Assembly (NCBI GenBank): GCA_002269645.1 | Contig: NIVC01001918.1 | Span: 1-64,000 of the forward strand | Direction of reading: 5' to 3' | Source: Macrostomum lignano | Lineage: Eukaryota | Length of the DNA: 64,000 bases | Shown: positions 35,509 through 57,282 of the stretch, piece by piece | Layout of the letters: each line of letters opens with the position of its first letter | Position numbering within the stretch: the stretch's first letter is position 1 | Notes under the pieces: generated by a model | The model's input: the letters and a program-made list of their open reading frames with translations, nothing else | Database searches by the model: none | Told to the model about the DNA's origin: nothing | Translations under genes and position numbers: made by a program

Positions 35509-38500
35509 ATGCGCATTTTGAGCTTGTCTATCTTGTCATTGCCAATTTGGCTGATTGTCTCGTTGACACCGGACGGCGCCAGCGGTCTTGGCAGTGAAGC
35601 AAAGAGTAGCGCCTCTTCCTGGCGACAGCAGTTGGTGAACTTCACTGGCAGAGACGGTCGCTGGCACCAGTGGCCAGTAAAAGAGCAGCGTGTGCTGGTC
35701 AGAGGTGACATTTACCTGGGAGGACTAATGATGGTTCACTCGCGGTCGGAAAGCCGTGTCTGCGGTTCAGTCATGCCGCAGGGCGGCGTTCAGGCCCTCG
35801 AAGCCATGCTATTTACACTGGACCAAGTCAACAGGCTTGGACTGGCTGGGCCCAACGTTACCCTCGGGGCCTTCATCAAGGACGACTGCGACCGCGACAC
35901 CTACGGCCTAGACCAAGCTGTTGAGTTCATTAAGGGTGAGAGCAACAGATTACAGATGCACATCAGACTGCAATCATACTGCACACCTAGTTCCTATGAT
36001 ATTGGTTTATCAAAGCTTTAATACCTTTCGAGTAACATTAGAGACCCATTCTGAAAGCTACGTCAACATAAAAAAAGCACCAAAAACTTGATGCATCCGA
36101 GCAAGCATCGCGTGCATGTAGACGAGAAAAGTACGCCAAACGTAAATCTTTTATGTGAGCAACGCGTACAGGCATTACTATTATGCATACTATTATGTTC
36201 AAACCTCGCCACAGAGATTCTGCATAGCTATCTCACTCGTTTCGGTAAATTTTTATCCCAACCCATACCGTACAGGGGCCGGGGTATATGAAGAGAATTT
36301 GTTGATTCCAAGTCCTCTGCTCCTGGAAAAAGATAAAGCACGAGAAAGTTGCACAATGGGTATATAGGCATATAGTGGGATGCATATGTGTCGCAGTCTG
36401 ACGCTCGCGCTATAGCCTCTGGTTCGATTCCGTTCGCAGTCACATCAACTCAGGGCCCGTGCCTTGTACACTAAAATCGGCTGGGAGTGGTCTTGTGATT
36501 CAATCCCTATGGTACATGTCTGAAGATTAGAAAATCAGGACCTCTTTGCACCCTGTGTGAGCGTGTGTATTAATGCGTGCCTGCACACAGCATTGGTGCA
36601 CTCGTATGCGCTCAGCAATGGGCAAAATTGCCTCATCGCTGGTTGTGGGATGATGTCGCCGAAGGCGTTGCTCTCCAGGATGCTCACACCGCTGCCCTGC
36701 ACTGAAACACTGCAGCCTCGCCGAAGATCAGCTCCGGCCAGGCCGCGTGCAGTCGCCGCCCAAGCTTCGACGCCGGAGTTGGAGGCGAAGGCGACGGGCC
36801 TCCATTGATCACTGGCGTTGTCGGAGCTCCTTCGTCCATCACGTCGAGCCACGTGGCGTCTCTGCTTAAGTTGTTTGATATTCCACAGGTTCTAACGGAT
36901 TTTGAGTTGTCTTTAACTCATAAATTTATTGCAAACTACGAGCTCTAAACTCGAGAGTTTCTCTATTTTAGATTAGCTTCTTTTCAACAGCGCCGCAGCT
37001 GTCGGACAAGAATCGATTTCCATTCTTCATGAGAACCATTCCCTCGGACGCCTACCAAGCTGTGGCGATAGTGGAGCTCGCCAAGCTGTTCAACTGGTCG
37101 TACGTGTCAGTCGTCTACGAGGACTCAAGTTATGGCAGAGGGGTGGGTTCGCATGATGGCTATGATTTAATTCACATTGGAAGACTTTCACTACACCCCT
37201 CTCTCTCTTAGTGTGGGGTAACCTGTTCAAAAATGCAGTGATTAAGCTCTAGCTCAACGGTTTGTAAATTGTTTAGTACGAAAACATAGCTAGGAAAGCA
37301 TTAAGCTGGTAAATTTATAAAGAACCTTAATTTTAAGTTTTTTATTTCTCAAGTTAAATAAGTTGTGGATTTCTAATTCTCTCCTGCCATCCAGGCTCTT
37401 GAGCAGATGGAGAGACTGTTTAGGGAAAGCGACATCTGCCTGGCCCGAGTAGAAACTCTGCCACGAGACTCGAAGCTGGCCAGAGTTGAGGACTACTATG
37501 ACAAGATCGAGCGTCTACTCAATCATCAGAGCCTATTTGACGGACTTGGCGCTAAAGGTACACGCTGAAAATCAAGGCAGAATACTGCTCCTGCTACTTT
37601 TAGTAGAGAAGTAGAGAAATATTAAATGAGGGTCTTCTCTCAACACTGTTACACAGGAGTAATTATATTCGGCTCCGACCAAGAAGTTGGCGACTTCATG
37701 TCGGCAGTCAGACGGCTCAACTGCTCGGACAAGTTCAGCTGGATCGGCTCCGACGGCTGGGGCGCCCGGCCGCTGGCTTACAGAGAAGGAAATGAGAAGA
37801 CAGTAGGTGGCTGATCCTCATAAACTTGTAACACCTTCTCCCGTAAATAAGCTGGTTAAATTGCAAATGATAAACTGTTTCTCATAACTCAGGTCGAGGG
37901 AGCAGTGACAGTGCAGCCTCTAGCAGAGCCCATCGTCGGCTTCAAGGAATACTTCCTCAGCCTGCGACCCGACACCAACAAGCGGAACCCGTGGTTCGCT
38001 GAGTTCTGGGAAGACTACTTCGACTGCTGGCTGCCCGACGGGCCGCAGACGCCGTACAACCAGAAGCACTCGGAGATGTGCCGACCGGAGCTCAGAATGT
38101 CGGAGTCGGACGCGAAGTTCGTGCTCGAGCCGCAGCTGCAGTTCGTCAGCGATGCGGTGATGGCGTTCGCGGTGGCGTTGCGGGTGAGGTGGGCTACGTT
38201 GAGCAAGAGAGGCTGGCTACAATCTCTAAGTGTAAGTGAAAATCATTCGCATGCAAAACTGCCCTGCAAAATCTTCCCTCAGAATCTCCGCATTCAGCTG
38301 TGCCGTCCGGGAGTTTCCCATCCAGCGTGTTTGCACCGGCTGGCCACTAGTGGCTCCGAGCTGCTAGTCGAGCTAAAGTCAGTCAATTTCACGGGCCTAT
38401 CCGGGATGGACGTGCACTTCACGCCGGGCAACGCGGATGGCCCGCCGCGCTATCGGATTCTGAACTTCCAGGCGGACAGTGAAAGCGGCTACAGCTGGCG

Positions 38501-41368
38501 CGAGGTCGGACGCTTCGATGGAGCCCGCGGCGGCGTCCAGCTCGAGTGGAGCAGCCTGCGCTTCCGCGGCGGGGCCAGCCAGCCACCAGTGTCCGCTTGT
38601 CGGCCAGAATGTTCGGACAGTTCAATCCGCCAGGTGTCACCCGGCGAGTGCAGCTGCTGGATGTGCGTCCACTGTCCGGATTATCACGTTGTCGACGAGG
38701 AACGACAGCATTGCATCCTGTGCAAGAAGGGCACTCGGCCCTCCTCAGACAGGACAACTTGCGAGCCCATCGATATGGTAAAGAATAGCTCTGGAACCTG
38801 AGACACAAAGACTAGTGCTCGATTGAGCGATGTGTCGAGTCTGCGACTCAAGATTTGTGCCTCGAAATAGAGGACAATCAATTAGTGATCATGACTAACT
38901 CCAAAGTCAAGTACTATACGAGCTACATGTAAAAGGACCAGTGAACTTGGGGACAGACGGATTTGAAGTCTAGTACCCATTCGATCTCAGCATATCCGAT
39001 GCGAGCAAATTTTTAGATTTGAGAAGCTTTGGGCCTGGCGAACGATGCGAGCTACTTCTAGAAGTAGAGAGCTGTTTTACATCCAAGGCTTTCATTTCTA
39101 CTTGTGGCTTGTAACGCCGGGAAACCACTCTTTCTCAGGAGTTCCTAAGCTTCGGCCACCCGGTGGCGGCTGTGGCAGCGACCCTTGCCTCCCTTGGCGT
39201 CGCGGCGTCGCTGTTTGTCCTCTTCGAATTTGCGCGCTATCGCGATAGCGCCGTAGTTCAAGCCTCCGGCCTGGAGCTGAGCCTGCTGCTGCTGCTGGGC
39301 CTCGTCGTGTGCTACTCGGCGACCTTCCTGCTGTGCGCCCGGCCCAGCAACTGGCTCTGCGGCGTCCAACGGTTCGTCGTCGGATTCGGCGTCGCCGTCA
39401 GCTCGTCGGCGCTGCTGGTCAAGACGGTGCGCCTCGAGCGACGCTTTAGAACAGGACGACCAGGTTTCGAGCCGTTGAAGCAGGTACATGAGCATTCGTC
39501 AAGGACGCCAAGATCATTAAAAACCAGACTTTAAGTCTCATCAACCGTGGGCAGAGTAGGTTAGCGGTAGCACGTCTGAATATCGCACCAAAGTACACTC
39601 GGGTTCAATTCAATAATTTGGGGCTCGGGCACGAAAGTCAGTCTGTGGCTTGTGGTTCAACTCGCGTCCAGGAGGGCCAAACCCCAAGGCACAGAGTGTG
39701 CATATGCCTGACAATGAGAACGGGGTCAGCAGAATGGGCATGATGGCTTGCCTACTCGCTGGTTGCGAGACTTATCAGTACAGTTAATTCACAGCCAGTG
39801 TCCAAAGACCCTGCAATCAAAATGACTGACCAACTGCTCCCCACGCATCCAAGGTGCTGCTGTTTCTGCTGCTTGTCGCTGTTCAACTGGCCGCTCTCAT
39901 CGGGTGGCTCCTGCTGCAGCCGCCGAAGTCGGTTAGCCACTTTCCGTCACGTGACCGACACCAGCTGGTCTGCTCGTCTCTGATTGGCCTGCTCTACCTG
40001 GTCGGCCTGGCTTACCCCATGCTGCTGGTGCTGCTCTGCACTGTCTGCGCCTTCTTCGCTCGGAACATCCCGGACGGGTTCAACGAGACTAAGCACATCG
40101 GATTCACCATGTACAGCTCGTGCGTCATCTGGCTTGGCTTCGTTCCCTGCTACGCCCTGACTGGCGCTTTTGTTCACATCCGGGTAGCAACGCTTTGCTT
40201 TGCCATTACCCTGTCTGCCACAGTCACATTGGCCTGCCTGTTTGGCCCGAAGTTGTACATCATCCTGCTGCGTCCCGAGCTGAACGTGCGCCAGGCTGAG
40301 CAGTGCGGCTGCCAGTATCCGCTGCAGGAGAGACAGCCTGAGCCCGAAGCTAAGAGGCTGCTGTCCAGTCAACTGCAGATAGACGATTGCTCTCAGACCG
40401 GATGTGAGTTCTTGCGTCTGGATATTAAAATTTTCGGTTGTTTTTTTCGTTAGACAGACCTGCATGGGCAGCTAAATCCTTGAGCCGGAACAAATGTCAC
40501 GAGTTGAAGGCCATTGGTGCTGCAAGCCTGTGACAAGCTGAAAAAGTGTAGATTCTAGAATAACTAAAAAGGCCACTCAGCACATTTGCGTGTAAGCTAC
40601 TTTCAGTTCAGTAGTAAGTTAAACTGAAGCATTTTTATGTATTTAGAAATACACGGCTTATTTATTGGCTCTTACCCTCAAGCTTAAACTCTCAACTCCT
40701 TAAACTCTCAATTTTTATTTCCTTCCTCGGTTGTTCCAGTCTAAATCTGCCATGTACATTTCAGTGGCGAATGTACATTAATTCTTAACCAATTATGGCA
40801 AGCTGTTTACGTCTGCAAGCTTGGCAGTCATCTATCTCAGTAAGTCATCTCATCTCATCTCATCTCATAAACAGTCATCTCAGCTGCCTTTATTTTTATA
40901 AAATAGCCTATGTATTCTTCATTGCTACTGAACTGAAAGTAGACAGCTATTTTACTAAGTATATACGCATGAGTGGCCCATCCAGTTATTCTGGTATCTG
41001 TGTGTACAACTGGGCTACTTACAATTTTAGAAAGAATTTCTTAACTACCCAAACATCAGTCTAACATCGAGTTCCTTCTAATTAACACATAAAGTCATCA
41101 AAACTGCCCCTTCCGGAACCGTGGCATCCGCATTCCTTTCCCCTTGCCGAGTCCCGCAGTTGAGCTCGCATCTCTCCATTCGCCAGTCAAGTCGCCAACT
41201 TCAATTCGGGCTGTTCAGACCGAGGTGACTCACGCCAGCTGGCACAGCGACCGAATGACCCAGACTGGATCGGGCGACTGCGGCAGCGTCTTGGTGCTGA
41301 CGGCGACCAGAAGATTTGCTGCTGCAGCTGTTGTTACTGCTGATGCGGATGCTGGGTTGGCTGATTGA
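35509..41368 (+). CDS. Class C GPCR of the metabotropic glutamate receptor family, most like Drosophila mXR/mangetout
   Basis: Phase-consistent exons: 35509-35935, 36716-36888, 36972-37142, 37395-37557, 37657-37802, 37893-38183, 38283-38777, 39139-39483, 39854-40403, 41160-41368 (last exon least certain). Signal peptide; Venus flytrap (GDIYLGGLMMVH, MPQGGVQALEAM, DDCDRDTYGL, RTIPSD, WIGSDGW, RNPWFAEFWE); 9-Cys CRD; 7TM (ASGLELS, PDGFNETKHIGFTMYSSC, FGPKLYIILLRPE). Confidence 0.92.
36370..36690 (+). mobile_element. SINE-like family A copy with B box, in GPCR intron 1
   Basis: GGTTCGATTCC B box at ~36421, hairpin CTGAAGATTAGAAAATCAG, and 3' part matching 3430-3575. Confidence 0.6.
39545..39760 (+). 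mobile_element. SINE-like family A copy with A/B-box-like head, in GPCR intron 8
   Basis: TAGGTTAGCGG..GGGTTCAATTC head, TAATTTGGGGCT, GAGGGCCAAACCCCAAGGCACAGAGTGT, hairpin CCTGAC..GTCAG. Confidence 0.6.
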
Positions 41369-41684
41369 GTCTCTGAAGAAGCTGACGGAGCTGAAGCGGC
41401 CCTACTACTGAAGCGCCCTAGCGGCCCTCTTTAGAAAGCCCTACTAGTAGATGAGTAGTGGTTAAACAGACTAATGCACCTCTTTGCGTTCTACCTGAGC
41501 CATTTAGCGTTCGATTTTGGTTGGCGCACTGTTTGTCGCAAAGTCATAATCACCTGACCTGAGGCAGTAGTTAAGTTTGGAGCTCATCTAGGGCTCATTC
41601 TTTTACAGAGAATACAGAATTTTAGCGTTATCAACTTAACGTTTTAGTCCAGCATCAGCCACCCCCCCCCAAGTTGGCGCAAAA

Positions 41685-42290
41685 CTCCCTCTCTCTCCTC
41701 TCCCACCCTCTCTCTCCTCTCTCACCCTCTCTCTCTCCTCTCCCACCCTCTCTCTCTCCTCTCCCACCCTCTCTCTCCTCTCTCACCCTCTCTCTCTCCT
41801 CTCCCACCCTCTCTCTCCTCTCTCACCCTCTCTCTCTCCTCTCCCACCCTCTCTCTCCTCTCTCACCCTCTCTCTCTCCTCTCCCACCCTCTCTCTCTCC
41901 TCTCCCACCCTCTCTCTCTCCTCTCCCACCCTCTCTCTCCTCTCTCACCCTCTCTCTCTCCTCTCCCACCCTCTCTCTCTCCTCTCCCACCCTCTCTCTC
42001 TCCTCTCCCACCCTCTCTCCTCTCCCACCCTCTCTCTCCTCTCCCACCCTCTCTCCTCTCCCACCCTCTCTCCTCTCCCACCCTCTCTCGCCTCTCCCAC
42101 CCTCTCTCCTCCCCCCCTCTCTCCTCTCTCACCCTTTCTCTCCTCTCCCACCCTCTCGGCTCTCCCAGCCTCTCTCTCGCCTCTCCCACCCTCTCTCTCT
42201 CTCCTCTCCCACCCTCTCTCTCTCCTCTCCCACTCTTTCTCTCCTCTCCCACCCTCTCTCTCCTCTCCCACCCTCTCTCTCCTCTTCCTC
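41685..42290. repeat. CT-rich 17-21-bp minisatellite
   Basis: Reiterated CTCTCCCACCCTCTCT(CT)C; almost purely pyrimidine on + strand. Confidence 0.95.
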
Positions 42291-42924
42291 CCCGCCAGAT
42301 TTGAGCACAAAAGAGCGCAATGTACATAGCACAGAAATTCCTCTAGGTAAATTCAGTGCATGAAACTACCTCATATTCAATACTGGGCGTTTATCTGCCG
42401 ACGAAATATTAGTGTTTGCTAGTTTTACTGGCGATCTTGAATATTAAGATTTATTGTTTTAACTATGTGCTTTGTTACTTTGTTTGTACCGATTGCCGCT
42501 ATGGAAGGATTGAAACGAAGTCAACACAGTCAGGCCATGGATAAAATGTATCCAATGCATGCTCAGGTCTGAGGGCTCAGGGCGTTGTTGTTTCACCATG
42601 CAACTTTTAACTCCAGTTGACCTTAAATGGCCCTCTGTCGGCTATACTGTTAATAGGTAATACGAGCGTAACGAGGGGGCGCTTACGCTTAATGATCGAT
42701 AATTTGAGTCTGAGCTCCTTGGATTAGGCAGGATTAGCTGTGTAATCAGACGCAAGCGTAGCACTCTGTACCTCATTGAGTCAGACTAGTCTCGGTTAGT
42801 CTGCATCGCAAAGTCAACGAGTGCGGCAGCCAAGTTCAACTTCAAGATCCATTACAAGGACACAACTAAAACTGCTCGATCGCTCGCAGCCAAAAGATCT
42901 GTTCCAATCGGTCGTGATCCGAAT

Positions 42925-43130
42925 CAAGACGAGACGAGAGCCGAGAATGTCGAGACGAGAGCCGAGAATGTCGAGACTAGAGCCGAGAATGTGGAGCCGA
43001 GAACCGAGAATGCCGAGACGAGAGCCGAGAATGTCGAGACGAGAGCCGAGAATGTCGAGACTAGAGCCGAGAATGTGGAGCCGAGAACCGAGAATGCCGA
43101 GACGAGAGCCGAGAATGTCGAGACGAGAGC
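42925..43130. repeat. 21-bp minisatellite with 84-bp higher-order period (~10 units)
   Basis: CGAGACGAGAGCCGAGAATGT; variants ACTAGAG and GGAGCCGAGAACC recur every 4 units. Confidence 0.95.
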
Positions 43131-44016
43131 TCGTAGTTGTGTTCCGCTTTTGATGGAGCTGGGGCTCAAGGTAGCTCTAGTTGCAGATGAATGACGCAAA
43201 TGACGCAGATGATGCGCAGATGAATGACGGAGATGACGAATTTGGAGTAAAGGCTGGAGTAAAAGTGAAGAGTCAGATCGAAAATCGTTTTCTACATCAT
43301 CAGAACTTTTTCTAGATCAAGTAGGTCTAACGCAAAAACTAATGCTTTGAATGTTATTCCGTTCAAGTAAGTTGTGTAAAATATTTTTGTTGTAAAATGG
43401 AACAGATAAGCAATTTTGGTTGAAGCACACTGAGTGAGAAGGCTCCAGAATCTTGGATACTCAAAAGTTGTGGCCCCATCCCGTACTTTACACCAATCAG
43501 GTGTGATAATTATCGGGAGTGTCCAGGGCGTCGGTGACCTGGTGAGCGCAGTCCAACGGCTCAACGGCTCGAATAGATTCAGCTGGATCGGCGACTCCGG
43601 CTGCTGGGGCATCCCGCCAAAGCCCTACGGCGACGCCAGAGATGAAGCTGTGGGTGCCCGAAACTAGGACTGATTTTTGCGCAGCTTACTATTGTCAGTA
43701 GCTATCTGAGTAATTCAACTTGAAAACTTCATCAACTATTCAGATTAAAGGCGCAGTGACAGTGCAGCCTCTAGCAAAGCATATCTTCGGCTTCAAGAAG
43801 TACTTCGTCGGCCTGCGACCCGACACCAAAACGCGGAACCCGTGGTTTGCCGAGTTCTGGGAGGACTACTTCGACTGCTGGCTGCCCGACGGGCTGCAGA
43901 CGCCGTACAACCAGAAGCACTCGGAGATGTGCCGACCGGAGCTCAGAATGTCGGAGCCGCAGCTGCAGTTCGTCAGCGATGCGGTGATGGCGTTCGCGGT
44001 GGCGTTGCGGGTGAGG

Positions 44017-44107
44017 CGGGCTGTGATTGCTGGGACTGTGCGGGAGGCTGTGATTGCTGGGACTGTGCGGGAGGCTGTGATTGCTGGGACTGTGCGGGAG
44101 GCTGTGA
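44017..44107. repeat. 27-bp intronic tandem repeat (~3.4 copies)
   Basis: GCTGTGATTGCTGGGACTGTGCGGGAG directly after the exon 6' donor. Confidence 0.9.
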
Positions 44108-45179
44108 TGCCACAAAAAGGCATTCGGGGTCGCAGTTCGAGCATTTTCGTGCCCCGTTCCATCAGGTGCTTTACAACCGCTTCTGCACTGCTGGCCTGCC
44201 CCGCCCGGACTGCCTGCGGCGGCTGTCGACAAGCGGCCCGGAGCTCTTAGCCGCGCTGCAGTCGATCACCTTCGAGAGCCATACCGGGGGCGACTTCAGC
44301 TTTACTCCTGACAGCCGCGACGGCCCTCCGCTCTATCGGATTCTGAACTTTCAGTATAATGGGGAGCAGCTGACAAGAAGCTACAGATGGCGCGAGGTCG
44401 CCCGCTTCCTCGCTCCAGGTTGCCAACTGCGCTTCTGCGACGGTGGCAGCACGCCACCGAAATCTGACTGCCAGCCCGAGTGTCCGCCGAGATCCCGGCA
44501 GGCAGCGAATCCCAGGGGAGTCGGCTGCGAATGCTGGCTTTGCGTCCGGTGCGCCGAGAACCAAGTTTTAAGCGAGGACAAGCAGCAGTGCAATACCTGC
44601 CCGGCCGGGACCAGGCTGTCCGAGATTCTAAACCGCTGCGAGCCAACTGAAGAGGTTCGCGGCATTCATGCATTTAGAGCAGCTTCTGGGGGGCAGAGCA
44701 GCCCAGAGGAAAACGCGCCCGACTCTCGCGTGACAGCCCCTGATTCGATTCCGTGTGCGGCGAAATTCGTTTGGGGCTTTACTTTAGTCGTCCTTGAGTC
44801 CTGACAACGGAAAACGCGAGTCGAGAAAGCACGCTTAAAAATTCTTTCAAATGAAAGGATCTTGTGATGACGGGGGAGATTCCGCTTTTCGTCTGGTGGT
44901 GAACGGACCCTCACTGCGGCCGCTGGCCCACTCGCGTACAACAGCTCGAGCGGCTCGACCGTCTCAAGCACTCGTAGGACGCAGTGCTAGTCGGGGGTTG
45001 GGACGGCTAACGACGCTCAAATCACGCCTATAGGCCCGACGCAGAAAAAAACCAAAAGAACAGTACAACAGGAAGCTTATGGTTATCCTGACACACGGAT
45101 GCAGCCGGCGTATTTCTCCGCGGGGCGGCGGGACGCAGCACAGGTGTGACGGGGAACGGAGGTAACGCAGACGAACAAC

Positions 45180-45495
45180 GTAAATGACGCAGATGAATGA
45201 CGCAAAGGACGCAGCTGAATGGCGCAAATGACGCAAATGACGCAGATGACGCAAATGACGCAGATGAATGACGCAAATGACGCAGATGAATGACGCAAAG
45301 GACGCAGCTGAATGGCGCAAATGACGCAAATGACGCAGATGACGCAAATGACGCAGATGAATGACGCAAATGACGCAGATGAATGACGCAAAGGATGCAG
45401 ATGAATGACGCAAATGACGCAGCTGAATGACGCAAAGGACGCAGATGAATGACGCAAATGACGCAGATGACGCAGATGACGCAAATGAATGACGC
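45180..45495. repeat. TGACGCA-based minisatellite (9-13-bp subunits); short related array at 43188-43240
   Basis: Reiterated ATGACGCAA / ATGACGCAGATGA. Confidence 0.92.
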
Positions 45496-46696
45496 GGAAT
45501 AACAATGCAACTAGTGGCCGGGGTTGCCAGAAACCTGGGAAGGGCAGCATCAAAACGGGCTTTCAGGGGGGTTCCAAGTAAATAGCTCGTAGATGGGCCA
45601 AAGTCTGCATGTAACGGGTATCCTAAGTTTTAGAATCTGAATATTTCATAGCCACTGCATCCGTGTCGTCACAGTTTCACCCGCCTCTCAGGAGCTCCTC
45701 ACCTTCAGCCACCCGGCAGCGATTGCCGCGGTGGCGCTCGCCTCTTTGGGCGTCGCGGCATCGCTGTTCGCCATCGGCGTGTTTGTCTGGCATCGCGACA
45801 GCGCCGTGGTTCGAGCCTCCGGCCTGGAACTGAGCCTGCTGCTGCTGCTGGGCCTCGTCCTGTGCTACTCGGCCACGTTCCTGCTGTGCGCCCGGCCCAG
45901 CAACTGGCTCTGCAGCATCCAACGGTTCGTCGTCGGATTCGGCGTCGCCGTCAGCTCGTCGGCGCTGCTGGTCAAGACGGTGCGAAGCGCCTTGTCGACT
46001 GGAGTGCAGGTTGGTTCGGACAGTGTTCGACGCGAGCCTTCAAAAAGTTTCTAAGAAACGAAGGTTGCTCCGTCCATTTATCATTTACTTCCAAAGTTTT
46101 ATTGAGATAAATTCCACCACCCAGATGGTCACTTTTGGGCTTCTCGTCAGCGTCCAACTGGCCGCGCTGACGGTGTGGCTCATGCTACAGCCGCCGCAGG
46201 TGGTGAGCTAATCTCCGTCACGTGACCGCCAACAGCTGGTCTGCGCCTCTCTGATTGGTCAGGCCTATCTAATCTGTTTGGCCTATCCAATGCTGCTAGC
46301 GCTCTTCTTTTTGATTGGCTCAGCCTCCTCCGCTCTCCGGAACGTCCCGGTTGCGAGCAACGAAAGCAGGCAGCTGTGCGTCACCGCCGTCTGCAACTTC
46401 ATCACCTGTCTGCTGCTCCTGCTCTGCTACTTACTGGCTAGCGAGTCTGCAGCCATCCGCATCTTGGCTCTGTGTTTTGGCACCTCAGTGTCAGCTTCGG
46501 CAACTCTGGTCAGCCTGTTCGCCTCTCAGCTGCGCTTCATCATGCTGAGTCCGGCCGCAGAGAGTCCGGCCCCACGTCAGGCTGACCAGCTGCAGGAAAT
46601 TCGATCTGGCGATGAAGCTGACCAGAGTCTGGTCAGGGCCTGAGAGCTTGAACTTTTAAAAATCAATGTGAAGGAGTCGTTTTGAAAAACAAACAC

Positions 46697-47586
46697 CTCA
46701 CCCCTACCCTGATCATCAGCGTTCTTCAGAGCAACCACCTCACTCCCCTAACCTGATCATCAGCGTTCTTCAGAGCAACCACCTCACTCCCCTACCCTGA
46801 TCATCAGTGTTCTTCAGAGCAACCACCTCACTCCCCTACCCTGATCATCAGCGTTCTTCAGAGTAACCACCTCACTCTCCTACCCTGATCATCAGTGTTC
46901 TTCAGAGCAACCACCTCACTCCCCTACCCTGATCATCAGCGTTCTTCAGAGCAACCACCTCACTCCCCTACCCTGATCATCAGTGTTCTTCAGAGCAACC
47001 ACCTCACTCCCCTACCCTGATCATCAGTGTTCTTCAGAGCAACCACCTCACTCCCCTACCCTGATCATCAGCGTTCTTCAGAGCAACCACCTCACTCCCC
47101 TACCCTGATCATCAGTGTTCTTCAGAGCAACCACCTCACTCCCCTACCCTGATCATCAGCGTTCTTCAGAGCAACCACCTCACTCCCCTACCCTGATTAT
47201 CAGTGTTCTTCAGAGCAACCACCTCACTCCCCTACCCTGATCATCAGCGTTCTTCAGAGCAACCACCTCACTCCCCTACCCTGATTATCAGTGTTCTTCA
47301 GAGCAACCACCTCACTCTCCTACCCTGATCATCAGCGTTCTTCAGAGCAACCACCTCACTCCCCTACCCTGATTATCAGTGTTCTTCAGAGCAACCACCT
47401 CACTCCCCTACCCTGATCATCAGCGTTCTTCAGAGCAACCACCTCACTCCCCTACCCTGATTATCAGTGTTCTTCAGAGCAACCACCTCACTCCCCTACC
47501 CTGATCATCAGCGTTCTTCAGAGCAACCACCTCACTCCCCTACCCTGATCATCAGCGTTCTTCAGAGCAACCACCTCACTCCCCTT
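46697..47586. repeat. 44-bp minisatellite (~20 copies)
   Basis: AACCACCTCACTCCCCTACCCTGATCATCAGCGTTCTTCAGAGC. Confidence 0.97.
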
Positions 47587-48486
47587 CTCTCCATAATGCT
47601 CTCTTCGCCTTAACCCTAAAACATTAACCATCACTGCAAACTTTTATATTTTATCGATGACACTGCAACTTTTCCACTTAGCTTTAAGTATCTACCATAT
47701 CGATTTAACTATTCATCGAAGTTATATTCAATATTATATTCTATCCTGCAATATCAAAACTACAAAGACTGCTCCTACCAGACTACTAACAAAGTCGAAT
47801 GAGTAGAAACTAAGGAAATAGCACTGTCGTAATTATCTACTACTGAGCAATAAAAGCACAATTGAAATTTTCTCCTCATCAAACTTTCGCTGGTGGAGTT
47901 TCTCAATTTTGTGCACTGAAATTTCACTTGAAGGGGAGCATTGCTGGATACACTTTTGCTACAAAGAATCCATCCCATTGTGCACGGCAGGGCCAGGATG
48001 CAGTTGAGCCAATCGTGATAAATTTCCGAAAGGCAAAAAATATTTCAAAGATTCTTTTGTGCGCGCCGCAGTTCACAATGGCGGGCGGCGATCGTAAAAA
48101 AAGGGCTGGACTGGCCGGTTTTGAATCAGCGACCAACTTATTCAGCAAGAAAATATGATCGCTATTGATAAAAAGAAAGTCAGGTAGGTAAGCTGCTTTT
48201 AGGAGGACTGCGCGGATGACCGCGAATATGGGCGACTGGCTGGGAAACTGATGATCAGGTGCTTGCTGAGAGAATCGGCTGTATATCAAAATTTTGCTTT
48301 AATGGGTTTCATATTATGGCGAACATTTGCGGTATTCAGAACGAGTATGTAGAGCGCAGATAAAAAAAATTATAGCCATTATAATTTTTACTATAGTAGA
48401 TTTATTAACTCATTTTAAAGGTATCTACCATTGAGCATTTAATGACTCAGAAAGAGACTGTGAGGGAAAAGAGGGGAAGTGGCAAT

Positions 48487-49222
48487 AGGGTGAGCAGAAG
48501 AGAGTGAGGGTGAGCAGAAGAGAGTGAGGGTGAGCAGAAGAGAGTGAGGGTGAGCAGGAGAGAGTGAGGGTGAGCAGGAGAGAGTGAGGGTGAGCAGGAG
48601 AGAGTGAGGGTGAGCAGGAGAGAGTGAGGGTGAGCAGGAGAGAGTGAGGGTGAGCAGGAGAGAGTGAGGGTGAGCAGAAGAGAGTGAGGGTGAGCAGGAG
48701 AGAGTGAGGGTGAGCAGGAGAGAGTGAGGGTGAGCAGGAGAGAGTGAGGGTGAGCAGGAGAGAGTGAGGGTGAGCAGAAGAGAGTGAGGGTGAGCAGGAG
48801 AGAGTGAGGGTGAGCAGGAGAGAGTGAGAGTGAGCAGGAGAGAGTGAGGGTGAGCAGAAGAGAGTGAGGGTGAGCAGGAGAGAGTGAGGGTGAGCAGAAG
48901 AGAGTGAGGGTGAGCAGAAGAGAGTGAGGGTGAGCAGAAGAGAGTGAGGGTGAGCAGAAGAGAGTGAGGGTGAGCAGAAGAGAGTGAGGGTGAGCAGAAG
49001 AGAGTGAGGGTGAGCAGAAGAGAGTGAGGGTGAGCAGGAAAGAGTGAGGGTGAGCAGGAGAGAGTGAGGGTGAGCAGAAGAGAGTGAGGGTGAGCAGGAG
49101 AGAGTGAGGGTGAGCAGGAAAGAGTGAGGGTGAGCAGGAGAGAGTGAGGGTGAGCAGAAGAGAGTGAGGGTGAGCAGAAGAGAGTGAGGGTGAGCAGAAG
49201 AGAGTGAGGGTGAGCAGGAGAG
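48487..49222. repeat. 20-bp minisatellite (~36 copies)
   Basis: GGGTGAGCAG(G/A)AGAGAGTGA. Confidence 0.97.
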
Positions 49223-49654
49223 AAGAGGTGAGGCATTTGACCAGCACTAACAATGTTCGCTGTGTTCGCGCGAGCCATCGGTAGATATAGGCAGTCAGCC
49301 AGACGACAGCGAGAAGAGCATCCTGACTCAGACTCGCCACCGGCCTGTCTGCTTATCAGATGAGATAAGAAGGTATCCCATTTCTGCTTTGGCGAATCGA
49401 ATGCTCACTAGTTAATTGGAAATTTTATACGAGTATGGCCAGGCAAAGAATTGAGGCCTCGATTTGATCGAATTTCTATTTGGTCTCCGGTGTCTGTTTT
49501 TTTATTCCCTAAGGTCAAGGCATCAAGAGATTAAAATCTTTCATTTTATAATTAGCTTTAATTGCTATTTGACTTAATAAACTATCAAACTTAAGTTTTT
49601 TACAAACTTGGTGTTTCTAAGGGACAGGCTGCGAGTGATAGGTGTGTACAGGCT

Positions 49655-51660
49655 GAGAGAGACAGGTGGACAGGCTGAGAGAGACAGGTGGACAGGCTGA
49701 GAGAGACAGGTGGACAGAATGAGAGAGACAGGTGGACAGGATGAGAGAGACAGGTGGACAGAATGAGAGAGACAGGTGGACAGGATGAGAGAGACAGGTG
49801 GACAGGATGAGAGAGACAGTGACAGGCTGAGAGAGACAGGGACAGGCTGGGAGAGACAGGGACAGGCTGAGAGAGACAGGGACAGGCTGGGAGAGACAGG
49901 GACAGGCTGAGAGAGACAGGGACAGGCTGAGAGAGACAGTGACAGGCTGAGAGAGACAGTGACAGGCTGAGAGAGACAGTGACAGGCTGAGAGAGACAGG
50001 TGGACAGGCTGTGAGAGACAGGTGGACAGGCTGAGAGAGACAGGTGGACAGGCTGTGAGAGACAGGTGGACAGGCTGAGAGAGACAGGTGGACAGGCTGA
50101 GAGAGACAGGTGGACAGGCTGAGAGAGACAGGTGGACAGGCTGAGAGAGACAGGGACAGGCTGAGAGAGACAGGTGGACAGAATGAGAGAGACAGGTGGA
50201 CAGGATGAGAGAGACAGGTGGACAGGATGAGAGAGACAGGTGGACAGGATGAGAGAGACAGGTGGACAGAATGAGAGAGACAGGTGGACAGGATGAGAGA
50301 GACAGGTGGTCATAATGAGAGAGACAGGTGGACAGGATGAGAGAGACAGGTGGACAGGATGAGAGAGACAGGTGGTCATAATGAGAGAGACAGGTGGACA
50401 GGATGAGAGAGACAGGTGGACAGGCTGAGAGAGACAGGTGGACAGGCTGAGAGAGACAGGTGGACAGGATGAGAGAGACAGGTGGACAGGCTGAGAGAGA
50501 CAGGTGGACAGGATGAGAGAGACAGGTGGACAGGCTGAGAGAGACAGGTGGACAGGCTGAGAGAGACAGGTGGACAGGCTGAGAGAGACAGGTGGACAGG
50601 CTGGGAGAGACAGGGACAGGCTGAGAGAGACAGGGACAGGCTGGGAGAGACAGGGACAGGCTGAGAGAGACAGGGACAGGCTGGGAGAGACAGTGACAGG
50701 CTGAGAGAGACAGGTGGACAGGCTGAGAGAGACAGGTGGACAGGCTGAGAGAGACAGGTGGACAGGCTGAGAGAGACAGGTGGACAGGCTGAGAGAGACA
50801 GGTGGACAGGCTGAGAGAGACAGGTGGACAGGCTGAGAGAGACAGGTGGACAGGCTGAGAGAGACAGGTGGACAGGCTGAGAGAGACAGGGACAGGCTGA
50901 GAGAGACAGGGACAGGCTGGGAGAGACAGGGACAGGCTGAGAGAGACAGGGACAGGCTGAGAGAGACAGGTGGACAGGCTGAGAGAGACAGGTGGACAGG
51001 CTGAGAGAGACAGGTGGACAGGCTGAGAGAGACAGGTGGACAGGCTGAGAGAGACAGGTGGACAGGCTGAGAGAGACAGGTGGACAGGCTGAGAGAGACA
51101 GGTGGACAGGCTGAGAGAGACAGGTGGACAGGCTGAGAGAGACAGGTGGACAGGCTGAGAGAGACAGGGACAGGCTGAGAGAGACAGGGACAGGCTGGGA
51201 GAGACAGGGACAGGCTGAGAGAGACAGGGACAGGCTGAGAGAGACAGGTGGACAGGCTGAGAGAGACAGGTGGACAGGCTGAGAGAGACAGGTGGACAGG
51301 CTGAGAGAGACAGGTGGACAGGCTGAGAGAGACAGGTGGACAGGCTGAGAGAGACAGGTGGACAGGCTGAGAGAGACAGGTGGACAGGCTGAGAGAGACA
51401 GGTGGACAGGCTGAGAGAGACAGGGACAGGCTGAGAGAGACAGGGACAGGCTGGGAGAGACAGGGACAGGCTGAGAGAGACAGGGACAGGCTGGGAGAGA
51501 CAGGGACAGGCTGAGAGAGACAGGGACAGGCTGAGAGAGACAGGGACAGGCTGAGAGAGACAGGGACAGGCTGGGAGAGACAGGGACAGGCTGAGAGAGA
51601 CAGGGACAGGCTGAGAGAGACAGGTGGACAGAATGAGAGAGACAGGTGGACAGGTTGAGA
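49655..51660. repeat. 19-21-bp minisatellite, ~2 kb
   Basis: GACAGGCTGAGAGAGACAGG(TG/G) with variant blocks. Confidence 0.97.
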
Positions 51661-52445
51661 GGAGATAAAGATAAAATAAGGACAGATAGAAATAGACAGG
51701 TAAAAGATAGAGATATAATTAGAAATATACTGAAAGGCAAATACAGGTGGGATAAGAGGGCCAGGCGGTGAGCACAGGCAGAGAATCAAAGGTTGTAAAA
51801 AGCGACAGTGTAAAACGCCTTGAATGGCCCACTTGAGCTGCACGTGTAAACTCAGTGCCCGGTCGGACTGAGTGTGAGCAGAGGGTGGACAAGAAGGATG
51901 GCGCCTCAGCTCAAAGAGAAGCTGCCGCCGCCACCGCCCTACTCTGAGCAGTGCTGAGCAGTAGATCTATCACAGGCTCATATTAAAGCAGCACGCTGGT
52001 TTTTTAGAGGATTGGGGATTGGGGTGGAGCAGGGGTCGCTGCTCACGACAGTTGCATCAGCCATGGAGAGTATCAACCAGAATCTGGCACGCACTCACAC
52101 ACACAGGGTGTACAGCAGCCCTGACTTTCTGATCGCCAGTCTTGACAGAAGTTTTGAGAACTTTAGTAAAAGAAAAGAAACTCGGTAATTTATGGTCTTG
52201 AAATTTCGGATTTGAACAAGAGTTGGGATACTCCAGATCCTTAGTCAACGGTCTCCATGCGTCAGCTCACATTCACAGCTTCACCGCCCCACCACCAACG
52301 CCTCCCGCCTCATTAAGGGCTGCTCAAGCACTGACTGAGCACTCCCTCTTCCCCAAACAGCTGCTGTGAGTTACAAGCTGCGATTGCCGCTGTCCGACAG
52401 CAAAACAGATTTCTTGCCATCTCTGGTTTAAATTTTTTAACCAAC

Positions 52446-52478
<33 letters not shown>

Positions 52479-52964
52479 TCAATCACGGCACTCCGGCAAA
52501 GAGTTTCTCTATCTGTCTGTCGTCGGTCTGTCTCAGCTAGTCCTCTCCTCGGCCCAGTCCTAATGAATAAAACATGAAGCTTGATCAAGCGCAGCGTAGA
52601 GTGAACAGCGCCGCTGCCGCTGTTAAAGCCGAGTGCAGCTACCGTTGGTTTTTCGTTTTATCAAACTGATTTATTTTCTTGGTTCTTCCTTCAGAGTCTG
52701 CACTGGGGCGTTCGGGTGTCTTGCTCTTCCAGCTCGGTTGCTTCTCGAGTTTAGTTTGGTCTGGTTTGAGCTCAGCTCGTTACGCAACTGAGGTCCGCCA
52801 CGCGGGGGTGGGGGGAAGCCACTTCTAGTGAATTGCTGGAGTGCCATCTTAATATCGATTCAGTGTAGGGTTCTATGGATAAGGGCTTTTAGCTTGAGTC
52901 TTCAAGACTGCAGTTGAATCATTAGAAAGTGCGAGTGGTAGTGTAAGAATAAAGACATAACGAT

Positions 52965-55900: not shown

Positions 55901-55975
55901 AGACTGGGGAATAGAGACTGGGGAAGAGAGACTGGGGAAGAGAGACTGGGGAATAGAGACTGGGGAATAGAGACA
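52965..55975. repeat. 14-15-bp G-rich minisatellite, ~3 kb
   Basis: GAGACTGGG(G)AA(TA/TG/GA); source of the spurious 1202-aa ORF. Confidence 0.97.
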
Positions 55976-56009
55976 GAATAGAGACAAAGGATAAATGGAA
56001 AGATAATTA

Positions 56010-56185
56010 ATACACACAGAGGGTGAATGGGGAGATAAGGGACACACACAGAGGGTGAATGGGGAGATAAGGGACACACACAGAGGGTGAATGGGGAGAT
56101 AAGGGACACACACAGAGGGTGAATGGGGTGATAAGGGACACACACAGAGGGTGAATGGGGAGATAATTGACGCATAGAGGGTAAA
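56010..56185. repeat. 32-bp minisatellite (~5 copies)
   Basis: ACACACAGAGGGTGAATGGGGAGATAAGGGAC. Confidence 0.9.
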
Positions 56186-57163
56186 TGGGGAGATAACGGA
56201 AACAGACTCAGACGGCAAGAAGGAGAAGAAAGTGAGACAGGGGAGGCACAGCGGGGAGAAGGGGGTGCGGGCAAGAAGCGCAGCTGCCAAACTAAATTGC
56301 CTTGGGTGAAGCCGAGCGTGAACTTTGCATGCGTTGCTAATTCTTCCCTCCTGCTATCGCCATGCATAGTGAGCTGGGTCTGGGCCAGCCGATCCAGCGA
56401 ATTTCGTGACATCAATGTCTGAGATGAAAATTTTACGACTCTTCCTCCGCGAGCTGCTCGCTTTAAACTGCTAACTGACAATCAGCCCCTGGGAGACACG
56501 GGGACTCAGGCGCTTGAGCTGACGGGAACTGGGGACTATGCAGCTACCACCGCCCTGGCTGAGTTAAAATTGAATGCTTGCAGTTGATTAATTTTCTTTG
56601 CTAGGCGCCAACTAAATCCCGGCTTAGCTTCACCTTGATGCAACAGCAGAGCACAGCAGGGAGCTTGCAGCCGGATTCCATAATACCCTGGAGGTCGGGA
56701 CCCCCAGCTGCCTGTCCTGTTGCTTCATGCATTATTTGGCAGCTCTTCGTGGCTTGAATGTGGACTCCTGTGTTCTGGCAGAGCAGAGAGTGGGGTAGGC
56801 AGTGGAATTTTGGATCATCTCGCCTCATCCCCCATACGTATCTTTTTCTCCCAAAGACGAGAGAAAGACGGAGGCAAGTGAACAGACTTCTTCTGCTTTG
56901 GTGGTGTTCTGAGATAAACTTCTCGGCTTCCAACTTCTGCCGCTTTTCCCCGAGTTTCCAAGAGAACTTTTGATAAGCGATATTTGATGCTGGTCATTGG
57001 GGTAGGAAAATTCTGTTTGAGAAAATATGCTAATGAGTGATGGAGAATTGCAATGGAATATTTGGAATGTTTGAAATAGTCAGAATGGGGATAGAAATGT
57101 GTGTGGGGCTAGAGAGGGGAGAGGGGAGAGAAGCGGAGAAGGGGAGAGAGAGGCAGAGATAGA

Positions 57164-57282
<119 letters not shown>

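What the first reader, a model, noticed from the sequence alone, without database searches (positions are those of the whole stretch)
43501..46643. Duplicated 3' half of the class C GPCR may be an alternative exon block of the same gene
The copy starts exactly at the exon 5 acceptor (phase 1) and retains five exons, their phases and the CRD cysteines despite only roughly half amino-acid identity in exons 5', 7' and 9'. That implies long purifying selection, yet no exons 1-4 are recognisable in the 2 kb upstream. Splicing the exon 4 donor (37557, phase 1) to 43501 would give a full-length receptor with a shared N-terminus and a different second half of the flytrap (SDGW becomes DSGCW), CRD, 7TM and tail: two receptors from one promoter by mutually exclusive half-gene use.
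Basis: partly seen in the sequence, partly recalled or inferred. Interest (0 to 1): 0.75.

Follow-up and report, generated by a model that had tools for sequence, protein, structure and literature searches.

The report
Truncated, stop-broken copy of flatworm receptor gene
Downstream of a glutamate-receptor-like gene in the flatworm Macrostomum lignano lies an old copy of only its last five exons, which was clearly protein-coding for most of its history but carries a premature stop codon here, so it is more likely a recently dead gene remnant than a second receptor made from the same promoter.

Summary
The window is Macrostomum lignano. Gene A, a nine-exon mGluR-like class C GPCR at 35509-40453, is followed 3 kb downstream on the same strand by copy B of exons 5-9 (43501-46643). 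All AG/GT sites, all exon phases and the nine CRD cysteines are kept. No exons 1-4 of its own were found anywhere in the 64 kb, even with a profile search.

- **Stop codon.** An in-frame TAA at 46209-46211 lies in exon 9', so splicing 37557 to 43501 would give a protein ending after TM4, not a full-length receptor.
- **Degraded 7TM.** B has lost hallmark class C residues (SD of SDGW, the TM6 Trp and FxP, TM7 PKxY) and about 9 residues of ICL2. At family-conserved sites it changed 55 times against 9 for A.
- **Gene conversion.** Exons 6' and 8' look conserved because of recent conversion from A (153 columns with at most 1 mismatch).

B was nevertheless under coding selection for most of its history: one stop, at least 8 in-frame indels on its own lineage, and hydrophobic TM helices kept.

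Another M. lignano copy has Ile instead of the TAA, so inactivation is recent. My best reading (about 0.5) is a 5'-truncated old tandem paralogue, now decaying. The alternative 3' block idea (about 0.22) is neither excluded nor testable here, because no RNA data were available.

The parts
35509..40453 (+). Gene A: mGluR-like class C GPCR with nine exons: 35509-35935, 36716-36888, 36972-37142, 37395-37557, 37657-37802, 37893-38183, 38283-38777, 39139-39483 and 39854-40453. The product is 936 aa.
   Evidence: Model built from the sequence with canonical GT-AG sites throughout. Pfam finds ANF_receptor 217.6 bits and 7tm_3 206.4 bits above their cut-offs, and NCD3G 26.1 bits below its 38.9 cut-off. 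The 7TM scores 192 bits against human mGlu7. The UniProt M. lignano models P0060, P0061 and P0207 contain this protein with 1-2 substitutions outside the alternatively spliced C-terminal tail.
37557..37558 (+). Exon 4 donor of A (AAG|GTACAC), phase 1.
   Evidence: The phase matches the exon 5 and exon 5' acceptors.
43501..43649 (+). B exon 5' (flytrap segment). It starts in phase 1 after ...CAATCAG. SDGW has become DSGCW.
   Evidence: Amino-acid identity to A is 54%, dS 0.96, omega 0.40. At columns conserved in the outgroups, B changed 11 times and A never.
43744..44010 (+). B exon 6' (flytrap), with an in-frame 24-nt deletion relative to A and the outgroups.
   Evidence: Nucleotide identity is 92.9%, dS 0.15.
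43864..44016 (+). Most recent gene-conversion tract. It matches A 38013-38189 over 153 aligned columns with at most 1 mismatch, spans the 24-nt indel and runs 6 nt into intron 6'.
44166..44654 (+). B exon 7' (end of the flytrap plus the cysteine-rich domain). All nine CRD cysteines are kept.
   Evidence: Amino-acid identity is 47.5%, dS 1.43, omega 0.31. NCD3G scores 29.8 bits, below Pfam's 38.9 cut-off, as A's does too.
45692..46009 (+). B exon 8' (TM1-TM3 and ICL2). About 9 residues of ICL2 that every outgroup has are deleted. The TM2-TM3 part is 90-100% identical to A in 30-column windows, which marks an older conversion tract at about 45790-45989.
46125..46643 (+). B exon 9' (TM4-TM7 and tail), ending in TGA at 46641-46643. 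The TM6 Trp and FxP and the TM7 PKxY are lost, but the helices are still hydrophobic.
46209..46211 (+). In-frame TAA in exon 9', at the start of extracellular loop 2 (after the TM4 'QPP' motif), where A has CAC (His). The M. lignano model P0207, from another copy, has Ile at this position.
40454..43500 (+). Spacer between A and B. It runs from an AT-rich flank of A, through an exon-like GC block at 41101-41400, a minisatellite at 41687-42285, a minisatellite at 42930-43130, and then 370 nt of unique sequence. It holds no relic of exons 1-4 and no AATAAA.

Best explanation
B is what remains of an old tandem paralogue of the mGluR-like gene A in Macrostomum lignano.

**Shown**
- For most of the time since it diverged from A (dS about 1 at unconverted synonymous sites), B was translated as part of a membrane protein.
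- B evolved faster than A and lost the residues class C receptors use for agonist binding and activation.
- B repeatedly exchanged short tracts with its neighbour A by gene conversion, in exons 6 and 8.
- B has no 5' exons of its own in this window, and the copy sequenced here carries a nonsense codon in exon 9'.
- Its TM5-TM7 region differs between genomic copies much more than A does.

**Inferred**
- B once had its own exons 1-4, and one recent deletion in this repeat-rich, unstable spacer removed them.
- That deletion started the decay of B. What sits at 43501-46643 is therefore a young, unprocessed, 5'-truncated pseudogene that cannot make a full-length receptor.
For: **The duplication is real and exon-limited.**

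**Long coding constraint**
- P(<=1 stop in 372 codons) is <=0.016 at d>=0.2.
- At least 8 B-lineage indels are all in frame.
- The 18 splice-site bases are intact.
- Mean hydropathy of TM6 is 2.05, against 0.24+-0.57 under neutral drift (P=0.001).

**Faster evolution and loss of hallmarks in B**
- At outgroup-conserved columns B changed 55 times and A 9 (binomial P=3.5e-9). With plurality polarisation the counts are 74 and 27.
- 7tm_3 scores 126.8 bits in B and 206.4 in A. Against solved mGluR structures B scores 92-102 bits and A 192.

**Recent relaxation**
- Model P0207, from another copy, has Ile instead of the TAA plus 4 further replacements in 172 residues. Its A part differs at 1 of 876 (Fisher P=6e-4).
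- One of those replacements, S to I in the NE(S)K motif, is derived in the other copy, so both copies appear to be drifting.

**Gene conversion of several ages implies long adjacency to A.**

**No exons 1'-4'.**

**The genome is prone to such rearrangements.** It is 15% tandem repeats and has 180 Mb of duplicated blocks (PMC5730564), and minisatellite arrays lie in the spacer and in B's introns.
Against: - No trace or scar of exons 1'-4' is visible, so the deletion is inferred, not seen.
- It must be very recent. With one disabling change in about 580 codons plus 9 splice sites, B can have been unconstrained for only about 0.02-0.03 substitutions per site. This is my own estimate from the rates and an assumed indel rate.
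- A partial tandem duplication with one breakpoint in intron 4 would produce the present layout in a single step.
- The exon 5' acceptor is intact and phase-compatible with A's exon 4.
- No canonical AATAAA lies between A's stop and B.
- Read-through, polycistronic transcription is common in this species (PMC5730564, PMC8629364).
- Pairwise omega is 0.31-0.54, not 1.
Confidence: 0.5

Rival explanations
1. B arose by a partial tandem duplication (from intron 4 to the 3' flank) and is, or until very recently was, an alternative 3' exon block. Read-through transcripts would splice exon 4 (37557) to exon 5' (43501). That gives a second subunit with the same N-terminal half of the flytrap but a different second half, CRD and 7TM. 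The TAA would then be a recent null in one of several copies in this polyploid genome.
For: - B shows long coding constraint without any 5' exons of its own in 64 kb.
- Donor and acceptor are both phase 1 and the acceptor is intact.
- B lies on the same strand, 3 kb downstream. No AATAAA occurs before 47849.
- Another copy has Ile instead of the stop.
- About 7% of M. lignano transcripts are polycistronic precursors and 15% of genes lie in operons, so transcription past A's end is plausible.
- One duplication event suffices.
- The architecture exists elsewhere: the terminal exon pair 7-8 of GNAO and the 3' variable region of PGRP-LC.
Against: - This copy cannot give a 7TM protein because of the TAA.
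- B's 7TM lacks the activation hallmarks and part of ICL2.
- Exon 9' appears relaxed in both copies.
- The splice would have to skip five good exons and A's 3' end.
- No docking- or selector-like complementary elements were found between intron 4 and the region upstream of 43501.
- There is no transcript evidence. The UniProt models that join A and B do so through a minisatellite 'exon' and retain in-frame introns, which looks ab initio.
- This architecture is rare compared with tandem gene duplicates.
Confidence: 0.22
2. B is a recent, dead-on-arrival partial copy of a different, full-length and functional class C paralogue located elsewhere in the genome. The 'long purifying selection' would then have acted on that source gene, not on B.
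For: - It would explain an intact frame and intact splice sites alongside high divergence from A, with no 5' exons ever needed.
- The genome is highly duplicated.
- The 50%-identity clustering of the representative library could hide such a paralogue inside the clusters of P0060 or P0061.
Against: - B sits in tandem with A, in the same orientation, immediately downstream.
- Conversion tracts of several ages (dS about 0, 0.1, 0.3 and 0.4-0.6 in parts of exons 6 and 8) imply long physical proximity to A.
- The A-B adjacency predates the split of at least two genomic copies.
- phmmer found no third M. lignano relative between 38% and 60% identity.
Confidence: 0.1
3. B is still a working independent gene. 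Its 5' exons would lie outside the window or be too diverged to recognise. The TAA would be a sequencing error, be removed as a 36-nt intron (46200-46235, GT..AG, in frame), or be read through.
For: - The frame is open again for 143 codons after the TAA.
- GTGGTGAG follows CAG at 46199|46200, and model P0060 ends exactly there.
- Another copy has Ile at the stop position.
Against: - The profile search of all 64 kb on both strands found nothing.
- A 36-nt intron is far below the 83-1037 nt seen in this locus and would delete 12 conserved ECL2 residues.
- No in-frame ATG lies upstream of 43501.
- Joining the spliced leader (...TTGCATG) to 43501 gives ATG GTG TGA, which is out of frame.
Confidence: 0.06
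4. B was a partial duplicate of A that was never expressed and simply drifted, or it is an assembly artefact.
For: - Partial duplicates next to their parent gene are common.
- The region is rich in collapse-prone minisatellites.
Against: - Neutral drift to the observed divergence is rejected by the single stop (P<=0.016 at d>=0.2, P about 0.001 at d=0.35), the in-frame indels, the intact splice sites and the kept TM hydrophobicity.
- UniProt model P0060 comes from a non-identical sequence (E355D in A) and carries the same minisatellite-to-exon 5' junction and an identical B over 432 residues. The adjacency is therefore reproduced.
Confidence: 0.03

Closest known systems
Unprocessed (duplicated) pseudogenes: 5'-truncated tandem paralogues kept partly similar to their neighbour by gene conversion
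   Same: - The copy sits in tandem on the same strand and retains introns.
- Part of the gene is missing and there is a nonsense codon.
- Replacement is faster than in the parent.
- Identity is a mosaic, with near-identical short tracts that cross an exon-intron border.
   Different: - B is unusually well preserved for its age: dS is about 1, with a single disabling change.
- It must therefore have been functional until very recently.
- How it was expressed without visible 5' exons is not explained by sequence alone.
Vertebrate GNAO: a duplicated terminal exon pair (7.1-8.1 and 7.2-8.2) used mutually exclusively (PMC5896119)
   Same: A local duplication of the last exons of a gene lies downstream of the original set, is phase-compatible with the shared upstream exons, and would give two proteins with a common N-terminal part.
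   Different: - In GNAO both sets are intact, conserved across vertebrates and supported by transcripts.
- Here the block is five exons (580 codons, more than half the protein) and is broken by a stop in this copy.
- It shows relaxed evolution and has no transcript support.
Drosophila PGRP-LC 3' variable region: alternative 3' exon blocks chosen through competing RNA pairings (PMC6191721)
   Same: Shared 5' exons are combined with alternative multi-exon 3' blocks that encode alternative ligand-recognition domains of a receptor.
   Different: - PGRP-LC isoforms are experimentally established and controlled by docking and selector pairings.
- No such complementary elements were found here.
- The alternative part here would include the whole 7TM.
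Metabotropic glutamate receptors (human mGlu7, mGlu2, mGlu4, mGlu5 structures; insect mGluR and 'mGluR-like' proteins)
   Same: A has the full flytrap-CRD-7TM architecture and keeps the TM6 WL..F.P and TM7 PKxY motifs. B keeps the CRD cysteines and a recognisable 7tm_3 domain.
   Different: - Identity to the best outside relatives is only 36-38%.
- B lacks the first four exons and has lost the SD of SDGW, the TM6 Trp and FxP, PKxY and part of ICL2.

Membership tests
Class C GPCR (mGluR-like), for copy B | Complete Venus-flytrap (ANF_receptor) domain | tested here: not met
   Only profile positions 186-352 of 353 are present (33.9 bits). No N-terminal half exists anywhere in the window.
Class C GPCR (mGluR-like), for copy B | Nine-cysteine domain (NCD3G) | tested here: met
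   All nine cysteines are present in exon 7' (translation). The Pfam score of 29.8 bits is below the 38.9 cut-off, as A's 26.1 is too.
Class C GPCR (mGluR-like), for copy B | 7tm_3 domain above the curated cut-off | tested here: met
   126.8 bits against a cut-off of 33.5. A scores 206.4.
Class C GPCR (mGluR-like), for copy B | Conserved activation and coupling residues: TM6 W and FxP, TM7 PKxY, full-length ICL2 | tested here: not met
   W830C, F833L, P835L, P869S, K870Q and Y872R relative to A and to at least 80% of 37 outgroups. The alignment to mGlu5 shows the same losses. About 9 ICL2 residues present in all outgroups are deleted.
Class C GPCR (mGluR-like), for copy B | Uninterrupted reading frame through TM1-TM7 | tested here: not met
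   TAA at 46209-46211, between TM4 and TM5. Another genomic copy has Ile there.
Alternative 3' exon block (mutually exclusive duplicated terminal exons; GNAO or PGRP-LC type) | Duplicated block downstream on the same strand, phase-compatible with a shared upstream donor | tested here: met
   The exon 4 donor is phase 1 and the exon 5' acceptor is phase 1. B lies 3 kb downstream of A on the + strand.
Alternative 3' exon block (mutually exclusive duplicated terminal exons; GNAO or PGRP-LC type) | The block has no 5' exons or start codon of its own | tested here: met
   No in-frame ATG lies upstream of 43501. The spliced-leader AUG is out of frame. This applies to the 64-kb window only.
Alternative 3' exon block (mutually exclusive duplicated terminal exons; GNAO or PGRP-LC type) | Transcripts containing the shared-exon to alternative-block junction | not testable with these tools
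   - No RNA data are reachable.
- Exact look-up of the predicted chimera and of A's products found nothing.
- The UniProt models joining A and B look ab initio.
Alternative 3' exon block (mutually exclusive duplicated terminal exons; GNAO or PGRP-LC type) | Both blocks intact and under purifying selection | tested here: not met
   There is a stop in this copy. Between-copy replacement is 5/172 in exon 9' against 1/876 in A. Past constraint is shown, present constraint is not.
Unprocessed pseudogene (partial tandem duplicate) | Intron-containing homologue of a neighbouring gene that lacks part of the gene | tested here: met
Unprocessed pseudogene (partial tandem duplicate) | Disabling mutation | tested here: met
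   One nonsense codon. There are no frameshifts and no lost splice sites.
Unprocessed pseudogene (partial tandem duplicate) | Neutral evolution (omega about 1) at present | tested here: inconclusive
   - Pairwise omega against A is 0.31-0.54, which averages both lineages over a long time.
- Replacement between copies in exon 9' is raised (P=6e-4).
- No DNA of the other copy was available to measure dS.
Unprocessed pseudogene (partial tandem duplicate) | Lack of expression or translation | not testable with these tools
   No transcript or proteome data are reachable.

The most novel reading that the evidence does not exclude
A class C GPCR locus that makes two subunits from one promoter by choosing between two complete 3' halves (exons 5-9 or 5'-9'). 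They would share the first half of the flytrap and differ in the second half, the CRD and the 7TM. The B-type half has kept membrane insertion but lost the G-protein-activation hallmarks. It could therefore act as a non-signalling partner in the obligate dimer, a division of labour like GABA-B1 and GABA-B2 (my own comparison, not tested). It would be encoded as an alternative half-gene, and this particular genomic copy would have just acquired a null allele after polyploidisation.
Probability: 0.2. Interest if true: 0.7.

Novelty: new member of a known kind. Interest (0 to 1): 0.35.

Why it matters
If B is a remnant, it is an ordinary but instructive case. A 5'-truncated paralogue was caught very soon after inactivation, and gene conversion creates a misleading pattern of 'conserved' exons. 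It also shows that the public M. lignano gene models for this locus (A0A1I8IHE0, A0A1I8IL26, A0A1I8IP55) are chimeric fusions that should be split. If the alternative-block reading were right, it would be the first class C GPCR shown to swap more than half of the receptor, including the whole 7TM, by terminal exon-block choice. It would then be a compact way to encode heterodimer partners. Existing M. lignano RNA-seq can decide this in an afternoon, so the question is cheap to close.

Tried and rejected
- **Homologue searches.** The search for homologous proteins with B, and with an exon 4 plus exons 5'-7' chimera, returned only relatives at 42% identity or less and no M. lignano protein. A search with the neighbouring IBR-domain ORF, meant to identify the organism, found nothing. 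The organism came instead from the phmmer scan plus a cluster look-up.
- **Contig look-ups.** The look-up of encoding contigs on four contiguous ORFs of the window found no contigs.
- **Exact-sequence look-ups.** A with either C-terminal tail and with E or D at 355, the exon 4 to 5' chimera ending at the TAA, and a B-only Met ORF are all absent from the collection. This has low power, because any one-residue difference fails.
- **Docking/selector RNA pairings.** I searched for complementary elements between intron 4 and the region upstream of 43501. Nothing convincing appeared. One 14-nt perfect inverted match (37683-37696 and 41189-41202) is unexplained.
- **Non-coding homology to map the duplication breakpoints.** I compared A's 3' flank with B's 3' flank, and A's upstream region and introns 1-4 with the spacer. 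No matches were found, so the boundaries cannot be located.
- **Spliced-leader trans-splicing at 43501.** As a way to express B alone this is rejected, because the SL's terminal ATG is out of frame (ATG GTG TGA).
- **Removing the TAA as a 36-nt intron, or using the acceptor at 46235|46236.** Both are rejected as implausible. The intron would be far shorter than any in the locus, and the products would lose conserved ECL2 residues or TM4.
- **Direct splice from A's internal donor (40403, phase 1) to 43501.** It is in frame but would place a flytrap fragment and CRD in the cytoplasm after TM7, so it is rejected on topology.
- **Structure prediction of the chimera.** Not run. It would be driven by the alignment and would return no coordinates for a contact test, so it could not discriminate between the explanations.
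Full report
**What the window is.** The sequence is eukaryotic, with GT-AG introns of 83-1037 nt and many minisatellites. A phmmer scan with the translated copy found two near-identical proteins. A cluster look-up names them as UniProt models of Macrostomum lignano: A0A1I8IHE0 (P0060) and A0A1I8IL26 (P0061). A0A1I8IP55 (P0207) is a cluster mate. The next best relatives are insect mGluRs at 38% identity. M. lignano is a free-living flatworm. Its genome is 15% tandem repeats and has 180 Mb of duplicated blocks at 95% identity or more. [quoted passage not shown] 15% of genes are assigned to operons (PMC8629364).

**Gene A.** I built a nine-exon model on the + strand, giving 936 aa with a signal peptide. 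The exons are 35509-35935, 36716-36888, 36972-37142, 37395-37557, 37657-37802, 37893-38183, 38283-38777, 39139-39483 and 39854-40453. Pfam finds ANF_receptor (217.6 bits) and 7tm_3 (206.4 bits) above cut-off, plus a sub-threshold NCD3G match. The 7TM scores 192 bits against human mGlu7 and keeps the TM6 'IWLxFxP' and TM7 'PKxYII' motifs. The three UniProt models contain A with 1-2 substitutions outside the alternatively spliced C-terminal tail.

**Checking the observation.** blastn and tblastx of A against the downstream region give five collinear blocks that coincide with exons 5-9, and the introns do not align. The copy, B, has exons 43501-43649, 43744-44010, 44166-44654, 45692-46009 and 46125-46643. 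Each is preceded by AG and followed by GT, and the phases equal A's: phase 1 at the first acceptor, then 0. Amino-acid identity is 54% in exon 5', 88% in 6', 47.5% in 7', 77% in 8' and 45% in 9'. The nine CRD cysteines are all present, and SDGW has become DSGCW. tblastn at E<=10 found no second set of exons 1-4 on either strand. A profile HMM built from A plus 37 outgroup mGluRs hit only A's own exons 1-4 (E 1e-11 to 1e-41); the next best hit had E=13. The description is therefore correct.

- *A stop codon.* Exon 9' contains an in-frame TAA at 46209-46211, 28 codons into the exon, where A has CAC. Joining 37557 to 43501 would give a 747-residue product ending just after TM4, not a full-length receptor.
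- *Gene conversion.* The two 'well conserved' exons are conserved because of gene conversion. dS is 0.15 in exon 6 and 0.29 in exon 8, against 0.96, 1.43 and 0.80 in exons 5, 7 and 9. Within exons 6 and 8, identity rises stepwise to 97-100%. One tract, A 38013-38189 with B 43864-44016, has at most 1 mismatch in 153 columns and runs into the intron.
- *A degraded 7TM.* Pfam 7tm_3 scores 126.8 bits in B against 206.4 in A. Against solved mGluR structures B scores 92-102 bits and A 192.

**Was B selected as a coding sequence?** Yes, for most of its history.
- I mutated A's exons 5, 7 and 9 neutrally. The chance of one stop or fewer in 372 codons was 0.016 at 0.2 substitutions per site and 0.001 at 0.35.
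- With the outgroups as reference, at least 8 indels fall on B's lineage, and all are multiples of three. They include an 8-residue deletion in exon 6', a 5-residue deletion in exon 7' and about 9 residues lost from ICL2.
- All 18 splice-site bases are intact, which has probability 0.03 at d=0.2.
- B's TM6 is only 21% identical to A's, yet it is more hydrophobic (KD 2.05). Neutral drift to the same identity gives 0.24+-0.57 (P=0.001). TM7 gives P=0.04. The helices were therefore kept as membrane helices.
- Pairwise omega is 0.31-0.54. This averages the two lineages.

**Was the constraint the same as on A?** No.
- At columns where at least 80% of 37 outgroups agree, B has changed and A has not at 55 positions. 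The reverse holds at 9 (P=3.5e-9). By exon the counts are 11:0 in exon 5 and 27:3 in exon 9.
- With a looser polarisation the counts are 74 and 27.
- The losses include the SD of SDGW, the TM6 Trp and FxP, and the TM7 PKxY.
- B therefore encoded a membrane protein that had left the canonical class C activation mechanism.

**Is it constrained now?** Probably not.
- P0207 carries exon 9' from another genomic copy. It reads QVVSISPSRDR, with Ile where the window has TAA.
- It has four more replacements in 172 residues, while its A part differs from the window at 1 of 876 residues outside the alternatively spliced tail (Fisher P=6e-4).
- One replacement, S to I in the NE(S)K motif, is derived in that other copy. 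Both copies therefore seem to be drifting.
- Using the stop rate, 18 splice-site bases and an assumed indel rate of 0.05-0.1 per substitution, I estimate that one disabling change in 580 codons allows at most about 0.02-0.03 substitutions per site of unconstrained time. That is a few percent of B's age. This figure is my inference.

**How could B have been expressed?**
- No in-frame ATG lies upstream of 43501.
- The M. lignano spliced leader ends in ...TTGCATG. Joined to 43501 it reads ATG GTG TGA, so trans-splicing cannot start B's frame.
- Compatible cis donors are A's exon 1 and exon 4 (both phase 1) and an internal GTGAGT donor in exon 9 at 40403|40404. Only exon 4 gives a sensible protein.
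- The spacer (40454-43500) has no AATAAA. The first one after A's stop is at 47849, beyond B. With about 1.8 expected by chance, this is weak evidence.
- I found no complementary 'docking/selector' elements and no non-coding homology that would place the duplication breakpoints.
- The UniProt models that link A to B do so through an 'exon' inside the 21-nt minisatellite (P0060) or through a GC-rich ORF at 41.2 kb (P0207). They also keep in-frame introns and fuse the upstream RING and IBR genes. I treat them as ab initio artefacts, not transcript evidence.

**Weighing the explanations.** The data establish an old, long-translated block that has been relaxed recently and now lacks 5' exons. Two histories fit.
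- *(a) Deletion of the 5' half.* A whole-gene tandem duplicate evolved quickly and then lost exons 1'-4' in one recent deletion in this unstable, repeat-rich spacer. Both genomic copies began to decay afterwards.
- *(b) Alternative 3' block.* A partial tandem duplication, from intron 4 to the 3' flank, produced a block that has been used with A's exons 1-4.

History (a) needs a recent deletion that leaves no scar. It explains the absent exons and the onset of decay in both copies with one event, and it rests on a very common class of event. History (b) needs a single duplication and fits the phase match. It requires a rare architecture, the skipping of five exons and A's 3' end, and a separate reason for the recent relaxation. 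I put (a) at about 0.5 and (b) at about 0.22. A recent partial copy of another paralogue gets about 0.1; conversion tracts of several ages and the shared adjacency in two copies argue against it. A still-functional independent gene gets about 0.06. Never-functional drift or an assembly artefact gets about 0.03.

**Comparison with known systems.**
- As a sequence, B belongs to the mGluR-like class C GPCRs but fails several defining features: a complete flytrap, the activation motifs and an open frame.
Examples are vertebrate GNAO exons 7-8 (PMC5896119) and the 3' variable region of Drosophila PGRP-LC (PMC6191721).
- The positional and phase criteria for that class are met. The transcript criterion could not be tested. 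The 'both blocks intact and selected' criterion is not met in this copy.
- As a remnant, B is a typical unprocessed pseudogene, except for how recently it died.

**Verdict.** The most likely reading is a recently inactivated, 5'-truncated paralogue, partly overwritten by gene conversion. Interest is moderate to low (0.35). Public M. lignano RNA-seq and the genomes of sister Macrostomum species would settle the matter quickly.

Noticed in passing
window 40403-40404 and 41160-41368: A's last exon contains a consensus internal donor (GGAT|GTGAGT, phase 1). An acceptor at 41159|41160 opens a GC-rich (0.56-0.62) 69-codon ORF ending in TGA at 41366-41368. This may be a tenth exon giving A an alternative C-terminal tail, for a 989-aa product. 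The UniProt model A0A1I8IP55 uses it. If real, A's 3' end lies only about 2.1 kb from B.
   Followed up: partly
window 24120-46643 (+ strand): The public M. lignano gene models for this locus are chimeras. A0A1I8IP55 fuses the IBR/RBR gene, the TRAF-RING gene, A and B's exon 9'. A0A1I8IL26 fuses TRAF-RING with A and drops A's signal peptide. A0A1I8IHE0 fuses A with B through a minisatellite 'exon' and retains in-frame introns. All four genes lie on the same strand, so a polycistronic unit is conceivable but untested.
   Followed up: partly
window 40550-40617 and 40922-40999: Two nested inverted repeats in the AT-rich flank just after A's stop: 30 nt at 80% and 21 nt at 95% complementarity, 300-390 nt apart. 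This could be a MITE-like element or a long 3' UTR hairpin.
   Followed up: no
window 37683-37696 and 41189-41202: A perfect 14-nt inverted match between A's exon 5 (GAAGTTGGCGACTT) and the GC-rich block in the spacer. I estimate roughly 0.07 such matches expected by chance in the 6.3 kb searched. Its significance is unknown.
   Followed up: no
window 44019-44108 and 45165-45495: Minisatellites lie inside B's introns: three exact copies of a 27-nt unit directly after the exon 6' donor, and a 22/93-nt array in the 1037-nt intron 7', which is 361 nt in A. The repeat expansion is specific to the copy.
   Followed up: partly
window 60246-64000 (+): A Ty3/gypsy-type LTR retrotransposon, with a gag/protease-like ORF and a pol ORF carrying RVT_1, RNase H and integrase domains. 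It runs off the end of the window.
   Followed up: partly
window 23051-26257, 46690-47585 and 48428-59443: Very long CT/GA-rich and other minisatellite arrays, with periods of about 20-44 nt, fill about a quarter of the window. One (46690-47585) starts 47 nt after B's stop codon. In the arrays I translated, these repeats give long spurious ORFs, often in several frames.
   Followed up: no
window 10837-22578 (+): A large coiled-coil gene with a TPR/MLP1/MLP2 domain (nucleoporin TPR-like). It includes a 1163-codon open stretch at 19090-22578.
   Followed up: no
A residues 431-445 (window about 38103-38147): A itself has Pro where the outgroup P0062 has Lys ('EKQLQF' against A's 'EPQLQF'). By my own recollection that Lys corresponds to the mGluR1 glutamate-contacting Lys409. 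A may therefore not be a glutamate receptor in the strict sense, more like the insect 'mGluR-like/X' receptors. B has an in-frame 8-residue deletion (ESDAKFVL) immediately upstream of this EPQLQF motif, which B retains.
   Followed up: no
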